DNA of 64,000 nucleotides, taken from positions 14,508,001 to 14,572,000 of the forward strand of contig NC_088857.1 in the NCBI RefSeq assembly GCF_963853765.1, given 5' to 3'. The DNA comes from Magallana gigas. Taxonomy: Eukaryota. The notes under the pieces are model-generated. The model had not been told where the DNA came from, ran no database searches, and saw nothing but the letters and a program-made list of their open reading frames with translations. The translations under genes and the position numbers were made by a program. This document shows, piece by piece, positions 39,419-43,617 of this stretch (its first letter is position 1; every line of letters starts with the position of its first letter).

Positions 39419-40240
39419 ATTCCCTTACTAAAGAAATCAATTGTTTACTTAAATAAATCGGTATAAAGTGCAGATTACGGAGGGAGTGAATAAGAACAGC
39501 TGTTTATAAAACCGGTTTAAACTGTAAAAATGTCTAAAATCATTAAAGACTCAGTATAAAATTTCATAAACAAAATACCATAAATTGTTGTACGCACAGT
39601 CCTTTATAGATCTAAATAGATTGAGTGGGGGGATAATTAGAAGGAAAACTGTTTGATAGTGATGATGAATGTTAGAAGCGGAATTACGTAAGACACATCC
39701 CATCCTCTGTATCCGTCACGTTCACACAGTTCCGCCTCACGTTCTCGCGCCATTGCGTCAGTGACCTTCACAGAAGCTACGTGATTTGTTATTGTATGGC
39801 GACCCTGTCGGGACACAATTCCATTGCAGCGAGGAATTAAAAGTCGCTTGTTCTGCTTGATTTCTCAGAATATCTACATAGTTATACAATAAATATGAAG
39901 ACTACATATTTAAATTACAATAACCTATGATTGCACGTGGAGTTTGATTCAAGAATAATGTTATTTAAAGCACAGTGTAAAGAATCGAATCTTAAAAATA
40001 TTTTTGCCCCGTTTGACCTACTGCAGGGTACATTGTAATTATAAACAGTGCGATCTCGTCACGTTCCTCTGCTAAGCGCCTTACAACCGGTATATATATA
40101 TTTGCTATGCCTTACACATTGACTGGTATTTTGAATTTGTCTTGGAAGTGTTTACAATCCAACCTTTTTTAATTCAGGGAGAAAAATTCTACCATATATT
40201 TTGAACATTGTTCAGGACAGATGAGAATTTAACTTCAAAT

Positions 40241-41327
40241 ATGATAGGCCTTTTGATTAAAAATCCAGCGCTTCTGACAAGTGTGTTTTCGGCCGTTCTT
40301 CTACAGAATGGGATTCGTATGTCTACATGTGCCTTGAATTCAAAATTCAGTCATGAAACTGGTACAGTTATTTCTCGAAGCCCACCCGGATTGAACTCGG
40401 GGCTGAAGCTTTGGTGGGCAAAGCAAGTCACCCCTGAATATTACGTGGCGGGAAGACTGAGCAGACGACAGTTACAATACGCGGCCGAAGGAGGCTTTAA
40501 AAGTGTTGTTTCTTTATTTACATACGAGAACGACAAAGACTGCTGTTTTGGGATGGACTATTTACCCGCAACATCCAAAATGGCTACGATTGCCAAAGAC
40601 TCTGGACTTCAGTTTAGAACCGTGATGGATTCGGCGGGGACCTTGACATCTTCCGCCGATTCCGTTTCACAACTAAAACAGGCACTGAACAATATCCCCA
40701 CTCCCGTACTTGTGCTTTCAGACCGGGGCTACAGTGCAACATTTACTTTGTTTATGTATTTATTAAATTATGACAAGAATTTTACGATGGACAGAGCTGC
40801 TGCTATAAGTCATGTGTTGGGAATGGACTTGAGTATGAAATGTATCAATCAGAAACTGTGTAAGGTAACCGGAGAAAATGTCGAGTTTTCTAAGTTAGAT
40901 AAATTACCAAAGCAGTGGCTGAATTACTGGCATGCTATACCCGTATATAAGAATTGGTTTGTGGCAGGGCAAATTTTGGAATCACATATTCCTCGCATCA
41001 TGCAAGCTGGGTTCAAATCCGTTGTGAACCTTCGAGCTGGTACAACCCACAAGGGGAAACCAGCACAAGAAAAAGTTACACTGATGAATATTGCGGACAA
41101 TTCTAAGACCTATGGTGATGAGAATTTAGGTCCCAGACAGAGTATAGACGCGTTAAAACAAAAGATTCTTGATCCCCTTAAAGAGAACTCATATGTATCC
41201 CCGAATTCATCACACAATTTCGCCACGTCCAATCCAGAAGAATTCGGAGATCTCATTGGTTATAACGAAGATCTTGAAAAACTCGCCTTTCGTAAAGCAG
41301 GGTTCCCTTATTATCACTTACCAGTTG
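40241..41327 (+). CDS. Tandem DUF442/BLH phosphatase-like (rhodanese-type) domain protein, exon 1
   Basis: Two repeats: YYVAGRL...AEGGFKSVVSL...GLQF...PVLVLSDRGYSA and WFVAGQI...QAGFKSVVNLR...AGFPYYHLPV, matching the DUF442 pattern sGQi...GfktiINlR...Gl.Y.hiPv...PVlxyCxSGxR. Donor G|GTAGGT. ATG 40241 is the first in-frame ATG. Confidence 0.85.
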
Positions 41328-41395
41328 GTAGGTATTAAAATCCAATACACATTATGGGAGAAATGAAGTGAAATCTGTTATATATTCAAGCGTTG

Positions 41396-41427
<32 letters not shown>

Positions 41428-41495
41428 CCGTAAAATTGAATGTAACTTTGTGATAATTATGACCAAATTTTTAACTATAGATTTTTCTCTTGCAG

Positions 41496-41606
41496 TCAAC
41501 AGTGAACCATTTTCAGCTGAACTATTTGCTCTCTATCAGCCAGAATTAATGGACGCCATCAATCGAGGACCAGTTCTTGTACACTGCGCCAGCTCCAAAC
41601 GAGCAG
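41496..41606 (+). CDS. Tandem DUF442 protein, exon 2 (active-site loop)
   Basis: Acceptor TTGCAG|, donor G|GTAGGT, phase 1-1. Encodes ...INRGPVLVHCASSKRA (Cx4R). Confidence 0.88.
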
Positions 41607-41868
41607 GTAGGTTGGGATTTCATTCCTTTTAAAGGGAATTTAATCGGCTGTAATCTCGTCAATTTAGCGAAAATTATGAAAATGAAGATGTATTTTATAT
41701 GTTATTTGTAACACTATTGATTGTCAATTAATATACTTTTTTAGACGGAATACTATAGTAGTATTCATTGAATAAAGCACTTTTATTATATTTAAAGAAT
41801 TATTTGTAAAGTTCAAAATGTAGAAAGTATATTTATACAGGTCAAAGATTTTCGCTGTGAATTCAACT

Positions 41869-42072
41869 CAGGCACGTAGCATCGTTTTTGAAAGTGGGAG
41901 GGGGGGGGGGCAGACTCATCCAAAAATTCTTGACAAGTAAAAAAAAATAAAGAAAAAGGAAAATTGCAAATTTTCTAAAAAACGTGAAAATCCTAATCAA
42001 GGGTGAAGGGGGATGGGGGGGGGGGGAGAGATCGAAAAAGTGTGTATGGGAGGGGGTGATGCTACGTGCCTG
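41869..42072. mobile_element. MITE with CAGGCACGTAGCATC termini (hAT-like ends), copy 1, intronic
   Basis: TIR CAGGCACGTAGCATC / GATGCTACGTGCCTG with subterminal poly-G tracts. A related copy lies at 45264-45538. No clean 8-bp TSD. Confidence 0.75.
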
Positions 42073-42147
42073 CAACTAAAATTGATCTTATAAATCAGTA
42101 CATAATATTTTTCAAGCATCCTCATTAATTGTACCATTGTTTTGCAG

Positions 42148-42362
42148 CATACATCGCTGTTTTGGCCGCCGCGGTACAACACAATCACGACCTATCCTGG
42201 GCACTGACCAAATTATCTGACCTAGGACTGCCCGTAGGTCCCGACAGAAAGGCGGATATATACGACATGTATGTAGGGATACTATCCGGAGATCGGAAGG
42301 GAAAGAACCGTAACTCCAACAATGCATGCAAGGAATCCTGTGTCAAATTTAACGGAAACTGA
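42148..42362 (+). CDS. Tandem DUF442 protein, exon 3 (terminal)
   Basis: Acceptor TTTTGCAG|. Encodes AYIAVLAAAVQHNHDLSWALTKLSDLGLPV...*. The spliced total is 1413 nt, or 470 aa. AATAAA near 42816. Confidence 0.85.
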
Positions 42363-43617
42363 TGGAGAGGATTTGAATTATTTTTACACCTGATATAGAA
42401 TCTCATTATATTAGTACTGTGCAACTAGTCATTGGAATTTTTCCAAGTAAAATGACATGATTCATTCATTTTTAAGGATTTTTTGGGCATTATGATTTCT
42501 CCGAGGTTTAGGGGGTGGGGCGCGTTGAAGGGTTTTGTTGGCGTGGAGGGAAAGGAGAGGTCGTCGAATAAATCAATTATAACCTCGAAGAAATGTTTGT
42601 GTAGCTCCAATAGAATTTATGTAATGCTTTATTGCTTTATGATTTACTCGTGTATAAATGATTTTGTAGTTTTTTAATGTTCCATTTTTGATACTTGTCA
42701 AATGCAAGTTGAGATCTCAAAGGAAAATATACTTTACCTCGGTGTTTTGTAAATTATGTTTACTTTTTTTTCTACAGAGTTGTGGCTCCTATGTTCAATA
42801 TCAATTTATTTTTTCAATAAAAGAAATCAGTTTTATCTTTTTTTTATGTTTGTTATAAATGTAGTCTTTCATGCACTATTTAAGATTGTTTAGATGAGGA
42901 AAAGGTTAAGAAGGTTTTCATGTACACATTTTTTTAAAGGTAACCAATTTGATTACTTCTGCTAATAATAACATTTTATAACAATTTTAGTGCTGACATT
43001 CCATCACTTTATAAAAGAATTTTTAAAAATCAAAGGACTCCAAGTCATGCAAAACAAAGATTTAATCTAAACTACAACATAAAAAACACATATACACATC
43101 TTGATAGATTCTTTGATTTGTCAACAGCAACTGGGAAATCGCTGAAAAAAATGGAGACATTAGTTTTGAAATTATCAAGAAGCAAGTCTTTTGTGTATTT
43201 CTTATTTTTTTTCTTTCTTATAGATTTGATTTATTAAAGATCAATACATGTATTTTAAACTGGGAATACATGTATTTCCCTAAATACAATTTGTTGATTC
43301 AGTAAAATTTTGTTTCACATAGCTGTTTAAATACGTGGCCTGTAACAAGCAGTCTAAAATGTCTTTATCATTTTATGATAAAGTTAGATTTACACCCCTT
43401 TAGGACAGATCTAAGTTATAACAAAAGGCGCATTTGGTTATAGTACTTTATCCCTAAAACCAATCTAAACTCTCAATCCCTTAAATTAATGGAAAGTGGA
43501 ACATATATGATCTGACTTAAAATAACCCATGCACATGTTAACTATATATTTCCAATAGTACTAAATTATTCTAAAAAGCACATGTAGAACATAATCTATT
43601 CACGACTGACCGGCGAT

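What the first reader, a model, noticed from the sequence alone, without database searches (positions are those of the whole stretch)
40241..42362. Intron-bearing animal gene encoding two tandem DUF442/BLH domains, one active and one degenerate
Seen: 470 aa in three exons. Domain 1 has lost the catalytic Cys and Arg (PVLVLSDRGYSA). Domain 2 keeps Cx4R (PVLVHCASSKRA) and carries an insertion of about 70 aa after the NLR strand. The N-terminus is hydrophobic and could be a targeting peptide. Established: DUF442 (TIGR01244/BLH phosphatase-like) is mainly bacterial, has Cx4R rather than the PTP Cx5R, and acts as a sulfurtransferase, often fused to sulfide:quinone oxidoreductase or persulfide dioxygenase. 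Inference: a possibly horizontally acquired and domesticated sulfane-sulfur handling enzyme with a pseudo-enzyme partner domain. This is plausible for a bivalve exposed to sulfidic sediments and, if real, would add an undescribed branch to animal sulfide detoxification. The GT-AG introns argue against contamination.
Basis: partly seen in the sequence, partly recalled or inferred. Interest (0 to 1): 0.75.

Follow-up and report, generated by a model that had tools for sequence, protein, structure and literature searches.

The report
Oyster tandem DUF442-like enzyme gene, relocalised paralogue
This is a real, spliced and expressed oyster gene for a two-domain cysteine enzyme related to bacterial DUF442 sulfur-transferases; it is not a recent bacterial import but an oyster-specific copy of an old, unstudied animal and protist family, and this copy appears to have left the endoplasmic reticulum.

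Summary
Three exons (40241-41327, 41496-41606, 42148-42362, GT-AG, both phase 1) encode 470 aa, and RNA contigs from three studies carry both splice joints.

- **Domains:** the protein has two homologous Cys-phosphatase-fold domains nearest DUF442/BLH (PF04273, 38.9 bits against a cut-off of 26.1).
- **Domain 1:** it carries Ser160 where relatives have the loop Cys.
- **Domain 2:** it keeps C393-x4-R398 and a conserved insert of about 62 aa.

The family is not a bivalve acquisition. It occurs in molluscs, annelids, hemichordates and protists such as Bigelowiella. The Ptychodera gene has the same two intron positions, the same phases and the same 111-nt exon 2.

Most mollusc members have a signal peptide, an -xEL tail typical of ER retention, a conserved N-glycosylation sequon and a Cys in both domains. 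The window gene is an oyster-specific duplicate that lost all four of these. Mussel and limpet copies show the same losses, and an AU test rejects a single origin for the oyster and mussel copies. Its N-terminus is amphipathic and basic with an R-x-M-S motif, which suggests mitochondrial import.

Sulfur-transferase chemistry is favoured by the six-residue loop but is untested. The family is uncharacterised in the papers searched. I class it as a new variant of a known kind.

The parts
40100..40240 (+). 5' UTR (at least this far upstream)
   Evidence: RNA contigs run contiguously over 40100-40283. An in-frame stop lies 12 codons before the ATG.
40241..41327 (+). Exon 1 CDS (1087 nt, ends in phase 1). 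It encodes residues 1-362 plus the first base of codon 363.
   Evidence: The donor G|gtaggt was confirmed by spliced RNA contigs.
40241..40354 (+). N-terminal targeting segment, residues 1-38. It is an amphipathic, moderately hydrophobic helix (ALLTSVFSAVLL) flanked by K/R, followed by NGIR-MST. The first acidic residue is at position 39.
   Evidence: The segment is conserved in other oysters' class B copies (P0002, P0005, P0006). AF2 predicts a helix over residues 5-27 at low pLDDT.
40400..40897 (+). Domain 1 (residues 54-219). It is DUF442-like with a Cys-phosphatase fold and is catalytically dead in this copy.
   Evidence: Pfam PF04273 23.4 bits and TIGR01244 28.7 bits. VIA-align matches model residues 54-206 to the DUF442 structure 2f46 at Z 12.9.
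40718..40720 (+). Ser160 codon (TCA), at the position of the domain-1 loop Cys (HCDRGYT in the paralogue and other molluscs).
   Evidence: Alignments.
40916..42296 (+). Domain 2 (residues 226-449, spanning both introns). It is DUF442-like and is the predicted active domain.
   Evidence: Pfam PF04273 on P0001 345-404. VIA-align Z 13.4 to DUF442 3gxh and Z 13.6 to Tk-PTP over model residues 221-451.
41036..41308 (+). The segment of domain 2 between the NLR strand and YYHLP (residues 266-356). It holds about 62 aa more than domain 1 and carries family-invariant residues (QE.VTL.N, RQ, N..E[FY]GD..GYNE).
41328..41495 (+). Intron 1 (168 nt, GT..AG, phase 1)
   Evidence: The joint is seen in 3 RNA runs. 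The position and phase are the same in the Ptychodera gene and in the oyster's own paralogue.
41496..41606 (+). Exon 2 (111 nt). It encodes the loop before the P-loop and the P-loop itself.
   Evidence: Exon 2 of the Ptychodera gene is also exactly 111 nt.
41585..41602 (+). P-loop C393-A-S-S-K-R398 (Cx4R), from the Cys codon 41585-41587 to the Arg codon 41600-41602.
   Evidence: The motif is invariant in 25/25 aligned relatives. It is one residue shorter than the Cx5R of TpbA in HMMER's alignment.
41607..42147 (+). Intron 2 (541 nt, GT..AG, phase 1). It contains a MITE-like repeat.
42148..42362 (+). Exon 3 CDS including the stop codon at 42360-42362. It holds the end of domain 2 and a Cys-containing tail (..NNACKESCVKFNGN) in place of the -xEL tail of relatives.
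42363..42600 (+). 3' UTR (at least to 42600)
   Evidence: RNA contigs of X2 and X5 cover 42144-42600.

Best explanation
The gene encodes a 470-aa protein made of two homologous Cys-phosphatase-fold domains of the DUF442/BLH kind. It belongs to an old eukaryotic family found in protists, annelids, molluscs and hemichordates. The usual members of that family enter the secretory pathway. They have a signal peptide plus either an -xEL tail of the ER-retention type or a hydrophobic tail of the GPI type.

The window gene is an oyster-lineage duplicate, which I call 'class B'. Its sister copy on another chromosome of the same genome keeps the ancestral form. After the duplication it evolved fast and lost four things:
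- the -xEL tail;
- the strongly hydrophobic signal core;
- a sequon conserved in all class A copies;
- the domain-1 loop Cys, which became Ser160.

**Likely mechanism (inferred, not shown).** Domain 2 is the only catalytic unit. Its six-residue loop C393-A-S-S-K-R398 has the length and the loop-end Arg of the experimentally characterised DUF442 sulfur-transferases, whose loop is CRTGTR. Cys393 would therefore take sulfane sulfur from a donor such as thiosulfate, GSSH or polysulfide as a Cys-persulfide, and pass it on to a thiol, sulfite or cyanide. Arg398 would bind and activate the anionic donor. The conserved 62-aa insert would shape the substrate pocket. Domain 1 would serve as a non-catalytic scaffold, as in tandem rhodanese.

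**Likely location (inferred).** The protein has left the ER. It most probably goes to mitochondria through an amphipathic basic presequence with an R-x-M-S site of the R-2 type. There it would sit beside the SQR, persulfide dioxygenase and rhodanese pathway.
For: **Gene and expression.** The model and its transcription rest.

**Domains.**
- PF04273 scores 38.9 bits against a cut-off of 26.1.
- Domains 1 and 2 are homologous (hhalign probability 97.9%).
- Per-domain structural matches are to the DUF442 structures 2f46 (Z 12.9) and 3gxh (Z 13.4).

**Age and vertical descent.**
- Named members come from bivalves, gastropods, Owenia, Capitella, Lamellibrachia, Saccoglossus, Ptychodera, Glandiceps and Bigelowiella natans.
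- The tree follows the species tree.
- The Ptychodera gene has exon 1 of 1084 nt in phase 1 ending at HLPV|, and exon 2 of 111 nt in phase 1 ending at YRA|. The window gene has 1087 nt and 111 nt.

**Duplication.**
- Oyster B is sister to oyster A with support 100/99.
- Mussel B is sister to mussel A with support 100/99.
- Holding oyster B and mussel B together costs 59 lnL units (p-AU 1e-154).
- The paralogue lies at G000:C4:32616057-32617666 and ends ..REEEL.

**Exit from the ER.**
- Every mollusc class A sequence in the table ends in -EL or -DL (KDEL, REEL, HNEL, KTEL, RVEL and the like), and no class B sequence does.
- The sequon at window residue ~176 is present in 11/11 class A copies and 0/7 class B copies.
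- The hydrophobic core scores KD10 2.4-3.7 in nearly all class A copies, 2.1-2.2 in oyster B and 1.0-1.7 in mussel and limpet B.
- An R-x-[MF]-S motif is present in all class B N-termini and in almost no class A ones.
- The N-terminal segment is conserved among oysters that are only 61-73% identical overall.

**Chemistry.**
- The Cx4R loop is conserved in almost all members.
- HMMER needs a one-residue gap in the P-loop to align it with the Cx5R of TpbA.
- No conserved acidic residue follows the HLPV strand, which is where DSPs place the general acid.
- The DUF442 loop CRTGTR has an essential loop-end Arg and a sulfur-transfer kcat of 4.9 s-1 (PMC8533005).
- Blh DUF442 has sulfur-transferase activity (PMC5823870).
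- DUF442 phosphatase activity is only 4.4e-5 s-1 (PMC10716126).

**Constraint.** Domain 2 is more conserved than domain 1. Against Saccostrea the identities are 77% and 62%.
Against: - No activity or localisation has been measured for any eukaryotic member.
- Pfam scores are modest. Relatives hover around the cut-offs of PF04273 and PF22741, and TIGR01244 is far below its cut-off.
- Structure cannot separate DUF442 from small archaeal PTPs or atypical DSPs, because the Z values are tied within 1.
- NMA1982, a DUF442 protein with Cx4R, is published as a genuine though very slow PTP, and it is secreted (PMC10716126).
- The window protein's loop, CASSKR, lacks the Gly of CRTGTR.
- The oyster class B N-terminus is of intermediate hydrophobicity, so it could still be a signal peptide or a signal anchor.
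- The lost sequon lies in domain 1, so its loss could be part of that domain's general decay and need not signal an exit from the secretory pathway.
- The near-identical [IV]RFMS[VT]G in oyster B and mussel B sits badly with independent origins.
Confidence: 0.45

Rival explanations
1. Domain 2 is a true phosphatase. It could be a protein-Tyr/Ser/Thr phosphatase or a small-molecule phosphatase, for example for inositol phosphates. It would use the Cx4R loop as Neisseria NMA1982 does, with domain 1 as a substrate-recognition pseudo-phosphatase as in Cdc14 or the receptor-PTP D2 domains.
For: - The fold is the Cys-phosphatase fold. The top whole-protein Foldseek hits are tandem PTP-like phytase (3f41, 4wu3) and Cdc14.
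- Tk-PTP and SsoPTP tie with DUF442 for domain 2.
- By sequence profile the best solved relatives of domain 2 are TpbA and VH1/VHR DSPs (E 2e-4 to 3e-3).
- NMA1982 (loop CRTGTR) hydrolyses DiFMUP by a PTP-type mechanism (PMC10716126).
- The invariant E-[FY]-G-D motif in the insert could supply a general acid.
Against: - The kcat of NMA1982 is 4.4e-5 s-1 (PMC10716126). That is about five orders of magnitude below the sulfur-transfer kcat of a DUF442 domain (4.9 s-1, PMC8533005).
- The loop is one residue shorter than every characterised efficient PTP or DSP.
- There is no conserved Asp at the DSP general-acid position.
- The whole-protein matches have rmsd 14-25 Å, so they reflect only 'two PTP-fold domains'.
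Confidence: 0.25
2. Class B is still a secretory protein. The N-terminus would be a cleaved signal peptide or a signal anchor, and loss of the -xEL tail would simply turn an ER-resident enzyme into a secreted or surface one. There would be no mitochondrial role.
For: - The oyster class B hydrophobic core scores KD10 2.1-2.2 over 10 residues, only a little below class A.
- The ancestral family is secretory, and annelid, hemichordate and protist members have GPI-like tails.
- The new C-terminal tail carries Cys pairs (C-x3-C here, C-x2-C in Saccostrea), and extra Cys (CC, C-x6-C) appear in oyster class B, as is common in extracellular proteins.
- An NFT sequon remains at residues ~180-182.
Against: - The core is amphipathic, with L,L/V,F/V,L,L on one face and T,S,S,A on the other, and is not uniformly hydrophobic.
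- Basic residues are present and there is no acidic residue before position 39.
- An R-x-M-S motif follows the helix.
- Mussel and limpet class B cores (KD10 1.0-1.7) are too weak for signal peptides yet show the same set of losses.
- The N-terminus is conserved as strongly as the mature protein among oysters, which is unusual for signal peptides.
Confidence: 0.35
3. One reading: a gene recently acquired from bacteria by a bivalve and then domesticated.
For: - DUF442 is far more common in bacteria. The nearest ESM Atlas clusters are bacterial.
- No vertebrate or arthropod member was seen among the proteins that carried names.
Against: - The same two-domain architecture with the same insert motif occurs in three animal phyla and in protists.
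- The gene tree matches the species tree.
- Both intron positions, their phases and the size of exon 2 are identical in a hemichordate.
- The oyster has a second, ancestral-type copy with the same intron 1 position.
Confidence: 0.03
4. Class B is a decaying or purely regulatory pseudo-enzyme. After the duplication both domains would be losing catalysis, and the protein would act only as a binder.
For: - The class B stem is long, 0.65 against 0.32 for class A.
- Domain 1 has lost its Cys.
- 15 of 28 exonic variants among the RNA contigs are non-synonymous.
- Some relatives have also lost the domain-2 Cys, for example Owenia copies with HSGSGHR and HSRTGHT.
Against: - H-C-x4-R of domain 2 and all invariant insert residues are intact in every oyster class B sequence.
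- Domain 2 carries 2 non-synonymous against 4 synonymous variants, whereas domain 1 and the N-terminus carry 12 against 9. The numbers are small.
- The frame is open, the transcript is spliced, and it is seen in many runs. The P0001 cluster has 280 members.
Confidence: 0.08

Closest known systems
Bacterial DUF442 / BLH_phosphatase domains (PF04273): the Xylella/Agrobacterium Blh N-domain, the N-domain of Cupriavidus pinatubonensis SQR, and Neisseria NMA1982 (PDB 2f46; also Shewanella 3gxh)
   Same: - They share the Cys-phosphatase fold (Z 12.9-13.4) and give the best Pfam match.
- The six-residue loop Cys-x4-Arg is conserved. Hemichordate and protist members even read CRTGYR, against CRTGTR in bacteria (PMC8533005; PMC10716126).
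- There is no conserved general acid.
   Different: - The eukaryotic proteins are a tandem of two such domains, and domain 1 carries a C-x2-G-Y-T loop with no Arg.
- A conserved insert of 16-62 aa sits in domain 2.
- They have secretory targeting signals and are never fused to SQR or persulfide dioxygenase.
- The TIGR01244 score is 41 against a cut-off of 85.85.
- In the window protein domain 1 has Ser in place of Cys.
Mitochondrial rhodanese (TST) and other tandem rhodaneses
   Same: - The architecture is an inactive N-domain followed by an active C-domain.
- The active-site loop has six residues. TST reads CRKGVT with an essential loop-end Thr (PMC8533005), and class A domain 1 reads CDRGYT.
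- The proposed persulfide ping-pong chemistry and the possible mitochondrial location are also shared.
   Different: The fold is unrelated (rhodanese/Cdc25 fold against PTP/DSP fold). The resemblance is by analogy only.
Tandem PTP-fold proteins with one weak or dead domain: Cdc14 (A + B domains), the Mitsuokella tandem PTP-like phytase, and receptor PTP D1-D2
   Same: - Two PTP-fold domains lie on one chain, with one catalytic and one degenerate.
- These are the top whole-chain Foldseek hits.
   Different: - They carry Cx5R loops and a general-acid Asp, and they are true phosphatases.
- The domain orientation is not the same (rmsd 14-25 Å).
- In Cdc14 the order is the same (dead N-domain, active C-domain), but there is no sequence relationship beyond the superfamily.

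Membership tests
Pfam PF04273 BLH_phosphatase (DUF442) | HMM score at or above the gathering cut-off (26.1 bits) | tested here: met
   P0001, the 98%-identical allele with the same exon joins, scores 38.9 bits. Exon 1 alone scores 23.4 bits. Relatives range from 20 to 39 bits, and PF22741 is sometimes equal or better. The family is therefore a divergent branch.
Pfam PF04273 BLH_phosphatase (DUF442) | Six-residue active-site loop Cys-x4-Arg | tested here: met
   Domain 2 reads C393-A-S-S-K-R398. Alignment to the Cx5R of TpbA needs a one-residue gap. Domain 1 does not meet the feature (S-D-R-G-Y-S).
Pfam PF04273 BLH_phosphatase (DUF442) | Cys-phosphatase (PTP/DSP) fold closest to solved DUF442 structures | tested here: inconclusive
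   2f46 scores Z 12.9 on domain 1 and 3gxh scores Z 13.4 on domain 2. Tk-PTP (13.6), ShufPTP (13.5) and SsoPTP (12.3) are tied.
Pfam PF04273 BLH_phosphatase (DUF442) | Sulfur-transferase activity (thiosulfate or GSSH donor) | not testable with these tools
   This is shown only for bacterial members (PMC5823870, PMC8533005, PMC9163753).
Pfam PF04273 BLH_phosphatase (DUF442) | Fusion to, or operon with, SQR or persulfide dioxygenase (common in bacteria but not obligatory) | tested here: not met
   There are no other domains in the protein. Neighbouring ORFs in the window are unrelated.
NCBIfam TIGR01244 sulfur transferase subfamily | Score at or above 85.85 bits | tested here: not met
   The score is 41.3 bits for P0001 and 25-40 bits for relatives.
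Conventional dual-specificity phosphatase (PF00782 DSPc) | HC-x5-R loop, general-acid Asp, and a score at or above 33.5 bits | tested here: not met
   DSPc gives no hit on P0001 and at most 27 bits on relatives. The loop is one residue short. There is no conserved acid after the HLPV strand.
Soluble ER-resident proteins (KDEL-type retrieval) | N-terminal signal peptide plus C-terminal [KRHQSA]-[DENQ]-E-L or a variant | tested here: not met
   The window protein ends ..CVKFNGN. The paralogue in the same genome ends ..REEEL, and the other mollusc class A sequences end in -EL or -DL.
Mitochondrial matrix proteins with a cleavable presequence | Amphipathic basic N-terminus without acidic residues and an R-2/R-3 processing motif | tested here: inconclusive
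   There is no D or E before residue 39, and the first 57 residues hold five K/R. The helix is amphipathic and the sequence reads ..GIR-M-ST. Hydrophobicity is intermediate, and no dedicated predictor or experiment was available.

The most novel reading that the evidence does not exclude
An ER-resident or cell-surface tandem DUF442 sulfur-transferase of marine invertebrates was duplicated and retargeted to mitochondria two or three separate times: in oysters, in mussels and probably in limpets. Each time it lost the ER tail, the glycosylation sequon and the domain-1 Cys. This would give these intertidal molluscs a bacterial-type DUF442 persulfide-transfer step in mitochondrial sulfide oxidation that other animals lack. 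A corollary is that the ancestral class A proteins would be the first sulfane-sulfur transferases of the ER lumen or cell surface.
Probability: 0.2. Interest if true: 0.8.

Novelty: new variant of a known kind. Interest (0 to 1): 0.6.

Why it matters
DUF442 has been studied only in bacteria, and its chemistry there is still disputed between sulfur transfer and very slow phosphatase activity. This finding shows a conserved, expressed eukaryotic family with a fixed architecture:
- a first domain with a Cx4T loop;
- a second domain with a Cx4R loop and a conserved insert;
- secretory targeting signals.

I found no paper on this family.

The family also offers a natural experiment. Lineage-specific duplicates repeatedly lost four features together, which points to a change of compartment. 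If the new compartment is the mitochondrion, animal sulfide detoxification in intertidal molluscs would gain an undescribed component. If it is not, the family still poses a concrete and testable question: what does a Cys-x4-Arg enzyme do in the ER lumen or on the cell surface?

Tried and rejected
- **The genome search with PF04273 on the window's own genome.** It returned nothing, not even this gene. The first-look filter is too coarse for such a weak match, so the result says nothing about other DUF442 genes in the oyster.
- **Raw reads of run X19.** Only about 1% of the run was read and none of it fell on the exons. This gave no information on strand, transcript ends or expression level.
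- **Profile searches of each domain against PDB sequences.** The matches were weak (E 2e-4 to 0.4) and mixed TpbA, viral and human DSPs, DUF442 and PTP-like phytases. They cannot decide the subfamily.
- **Foldseek and VIA-align on the whole model.** The fold is clear, but DUF442 ties with archaeal PTPs. Whole-chain hits to Cdc14 and phytase have rmsd 14-25 Å and reflect only the tandem layout.
- **The search for homologous proteins with the family alignment.** It was capped at 8000 candidates and added more molluscs (Pecten, Pinctada, Haliotis, Littorina) but no new phylum. I therefore do not claim absence from other phyla.
- **Synonymous against non-synonymous variants from RNA contigs.** There are 13 synonymous and 15 non-synonymous variants, with fewer in domain 2. 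The numbers are too small, and coverage too uneven, for a test.
- **The search of earlier findings by words.** Nothing was found. The search by place returned only this stretch and an unrelated thioesterase array.
- **Recent HGT or contamination.** Rejected on intron conservation, spliced RNA and the species-like gene tree.
- **Not done.** The AF2 coordinates could not be inspected, so the position of the insert relative to Cys393 and the domain interface were not examined.
Full report
**1.

Reading the sequence and splicing it in a script gives three exons on the + strand:
- exon 1, 40241-41327 (1087 nt);
- exon 2, 41496-41606 (111 nt);
- exon 3, 42148-42362 (215 nt including the stop).

The donors are G|gtaggt and the acceptors are cag|. 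Both introns are in phase 1, and the product is 470 aa. An in-frame stop lies 12 codons upstream of the ATG.

Public RNA-seq contigs of three runs from three studies carry both joints. One skips 168 nt and the other 541 nt, both GT..AG. The contigs also cover the 5' UTR from at least 40100 and the 3' UTR to at least 42600.

A 466-aa protein assembled from public runs, P0001, is 98% identical and has exactly these joins. Its cluster has 280 member sequences, and its contig of 1714 nt is too short to hold the introns. The gene is therefore real, spliced and expressed, and contamination is excluded.

**2. The domains.**

Pfam places P0001 in PF04273 (BLH_phosphatase, formerly DUF442) at 38.9 bits against a cut-off of 26.1. 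Exon 1 alone gives 23.4 bits for domain 1. NCBIfam TIGR01244 is matched but lies far below its cut-off, at 41 against 85.85 bits.

A profile of domain 1 aligns with a profile of domain 2 at 97.9% probability (E 5e-13). The two halves are therefore an internal duplication.

An AlphaFold model built on a 25-sequence alignment has pLDDT 81.6 and pTM 0.81. Each half has the Cys-phosphatase fold:
- model residues 54-206 match the DUF442 structure 2f46 (NMA1982) at Z 12.9;
- model residues 221-451 match DUF442 3gxh at Z 13.4;
- Tk-PTP (13.6), ShufPTP and SsoPTP are tied with these.

Whole-chain hits to Cdc14 and to the tandem PTP-like phytase have rmsd 14-25 Å. They show only that two such domains are present.

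Domain 1 reads PVLVLS160DRGYSA and domain 2 reads PVLVHC393ASSKR398A. HMMER needs a one-residue gap in this loop to align it with the Cx5R of TpbA.

From the NLR strand to YYHLP, domain 2 has 96 residues and domain 1 has 34. The insert is therefore about 62 aa, and it holds many of the family's invariant residues: QE.VTL.N, RQ and N..E[FY]GD..GYNE.

**3. It is not a bivalve novelty.**

Sequence searches and look-ups of source names find the same architecture in several groups:
- many bivalves (oysters, ark clam, scallops, pearl oyster, mussels);
- gastropods (Patella, Haliotis, Littorina, Nucella, Pomacea, Aplysia, Elysia, Lymnaea);
- annelids (three Owenia copies, Capitella, Lamellibrachia);
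- hemichordates (Saccoglossus with two copies, Ptychodera, Glandiceps);
- the rhizarian alga Bigelowiella natans;
- many unnamed proteins from metagenomes and metatranscriptomes.

The library of cluster representatives holds 95 clusters at E < 1e-30.

A maximum-likelihood tree of 38 full-length members follows the species tree: protist-like sequences, then hemichordates, annelids, limpets, other gastropods and bivalves.

The Ptychodera flava gene, taken from its genome, has the same structure. Exon 1 is 1084 nt in phase 1 and ends at ..YYHLPV|. Exon 2 is exactly 111 nt in phase 1 and ends at ..HCRTGYRA|. The gene, with both introns, therefore predates the split of protostomes and deuterostomes.

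Whether eukaryotes first obtained the domain from bacteria cannot be decided here.

**4. What the family looks like, and how this copy differs.**

Most mollusc members, which I call class A, share four features:
- a strongly hydrophobic N-terminal core (mean Kyte-Doolittle score 2.4-3.7 over 10 residues);
- a C-terminus of the type KDEL, REEL, HNEL, KTEL, RVEL or KEEL;
- a Cys in both loops (domain 1 HCDRGYT, domain 2 HCxxxxR);
- an N-x-[ST] sequon at the end of a domain-1 helix, present in 11 of 11.

By established knowledge of KDEL-type retrieval, this is the signature of soluble ER-lumen residents.

Annelid, hemichordate and protist members have a signal peptide and, mostly, a C-terminal hydrophobic tail of the GPI-anchor type. 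One Owenia copy ends in KQEL.

The domain-1 loop C-x2-G-[YF]-[TS] is conserved from Bigelowiella to molluscs. The ancestral domain 1 is therefore probably functional, and its loop-end Thr recalls the CRKGVT loop of rhodanese TST (PMC8533005).

The window's genome holds two copies. One is a class A gene on contig C4, which ends ..REEEL, reads HCDRGYT in domain 1 and has intron 1 at the same place. The other is the window gene.

In the tree, the window gene and its Saccostrea orthologues (66-68% identity) are sister to the oyster class A genes with support 100/99. They sit on a long stem of 0.65, against 0.32 for class A.

The window clade has lost the -xEL tail, the sequon and the domain-1 Cys, and its N-terminus is different. 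The same four changes are seen in a Mytilus-specific duplicate, which is sister to Mytilus class A with support 100/99, and in the Patella gene.

Before I saw the tree, I had noted the question of whether these copies form one clade. Forcing oyster and mussel copies together costs 59 log-likelihood units (p-AU 1e-154). The substitutions that destroy the sequon also differ between lineages: N-Y-D or K-T in oysters, Y-M-S in mussels and K-Q-T in Patella.

One observation does not fit comfortably. The oyster and mussel copies share [IV]RFMS[VT]G at almost the same distance from the start. Part of it (S-T-[CG]) is also present in Mytilus class A, so it may be ancestral. An old paralogue homogenised by gene conversion is not fully excluded.

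**5. Where the protein goes (inference).**

The window protein's N-terminus has these features:
- K7 is followed by ALLTSVFSAVLL, in which the large hydrophobic residues fall on one helical face and T, S, S and A on the other;
- next comes QNGIR-M-ST;
- there is no acidic residue before position 39;
- there are five K/R in the first 57 residues.

Other oysters' class B copies, only 61-73% identical overall, keep this segment almost unchanged.

Mussel and limpet class B N-termini are clearly too weakly hydrophobic for signal peptides (1.0-1.7), and they are Arg-rich. All class B sequences have an R-x-[MF]-S site, which resembles the R-2/R-3 motifs of the mitochondrial processing peptidase (own knowledge, not tested).

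Together with the loss of the ER tail, this suggests import into mitochondria. For the oyster clade the hydrophobicity (2.1-2.2) is intermediate, so I give a secretory fate about one chance in three.

The lost sequon lies in the decaying domain 1, so it is weaker evidence than it first appears.

**6. What it does (inference).**

The bacterial DUF442 domains that have been assayed are sulfur-transferases:
- Xylella Blh transfers sulfane sulfur from thiosulfate to cyanide or GSH (PMC5823870).
- The SQR-fused domain of Cupriavidus has the loop CRTGTR. Its loop-end Arg99 is essential, and its kcat is 4.9 s-1 (PMC8533005, PMC9163753).
- NMA1982, with the same loop, is reported as a genuine PTP, but its kcat is 4.4e-5 s-1 (PMC10716126).

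Domain 2 of the family keeps exactly this six-residue Cys...Arg loop. Hemichordate and protist members read CRTGYR. It has no conserved acid at the general-acid position of DSPs.

I therefore favour persulfide transfer at Cys393, with Arg398 binding the anionic donor. The insert would form part of the pocket, and domain 1 (Ser160) would be a scaffold. My odds are about 50% for sulfur-transferase, 25% for phosphatase and the rest for something else.

Domain 2 is more conserved than domain 1 (77% against 62% identity to Saccostrea). It also carries fewer amino-acid variants among the RNA contigs (small numbers).

**7. Comparison and novelty.**

The gene is a divergent member of the DUF442/BLH branch of the Cys-phosphatase superfamily. 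It meets Pfam's cut-off and the loop criterion. It fails TIGR01244, and it fails the DSP criteria.

Its architecture is analogous to tandem rhodanese and to Cdc14, but it belongs to neither.

Full-text searches for DUF442, PF04273, TIGR01244 and NMA1982 found only bacterial work. Database names for the animal proteins are 'uncharacterized protein'.

I rate it a new variant of a known kind. The family-level findings are the interesting part, namely the ER or GPI targeting and the repeated, correlated losses in lineage-specific duplicates. All of the functional statements remain to be tested.

Noticed in passing
window:41869-42072 (intron 2): This is a MITE-like element with perfect 15-nt terminal inverted repeats (CAGGCACGTAGCATC / GATGCTACGTGCCTG) and G-runs inside. 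The stretch 41864-41947 has summed contig depths in the thousands in all RNA runs, with many loose ends, so it is a high-copy transcribed repeat.
   Followed up: partly
window:41577-41897: One RNA contig of run X2 (depth 17) runs from exon 2 straight into intron 2. This suggests some intron retention or unspliced pre-mRNA.
   Followed up: no
window:42375 (3' UTR): Two RNA runs carry a 21-nt insertion (AATTACTGATTTGAAAGGTGC) relative to the window. There are also 28 exonic single-base differences among the runs, so the locus is highly polymorphic.
   Followed up: partly
G000:C4:32616057-32617666 (-), loci L002 and L005: This is the ancestral-type paralogue of the window gene in the same genome. 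It has a signal-like N-terminus, HCDRGYT in domain 1, intron 1 at the same place (..YYHMPL|gt) and the C-terminus ..NRTGREEEL.
   Followed up: partly
P0133 (Bigelowiella natans), P0102, P0104: These protist-type members (380-420 aa) have a shorter domain-2 segment (50 aa) and all end in a C-terminal Cys (..MLNC..LLKC..VLGC). The role of this Cys is unknown; it could be a persulfide-relay or a disulfide Cys.
   Followed up: no
P0048 and P0210 (Owenia fusiformis): Two of the three Owenia copies have Ser in place of the domain-2 catalytic Cys (HSGSGHR with a KQEL tail; HSRTGHT). Pseudo-enzyme forms of domain 2 therefore also exist in this family.
   Followed up: no
window:41405-41425, 41898-41910, 42010-42030: There are long G homopolymer runs in both introns. 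Reads appear cut there.
   Followed up: no
window:48641-48970 (-), 54667-54987 (+), 36754-37740 (+): Other long ORFs lie near the gene: a piece resembling a v-SNARE coiled coil (..LNIVKLRDRNGKLDDLVEKGDML..), a coiled-coil exon, and a 328-aa Ser/Arg/Lys-rich ORF. None is related to sulfur metabolism.
   Followed up: no
L006-L009 (contigs carrying P0191): The 515-aa metagenomic family member is encoded without introns on 3.4-4.7-kb contigs with wide gene spacing. This is consistent with a small eukaryote, but the organism was not identified.
   Followed up: no
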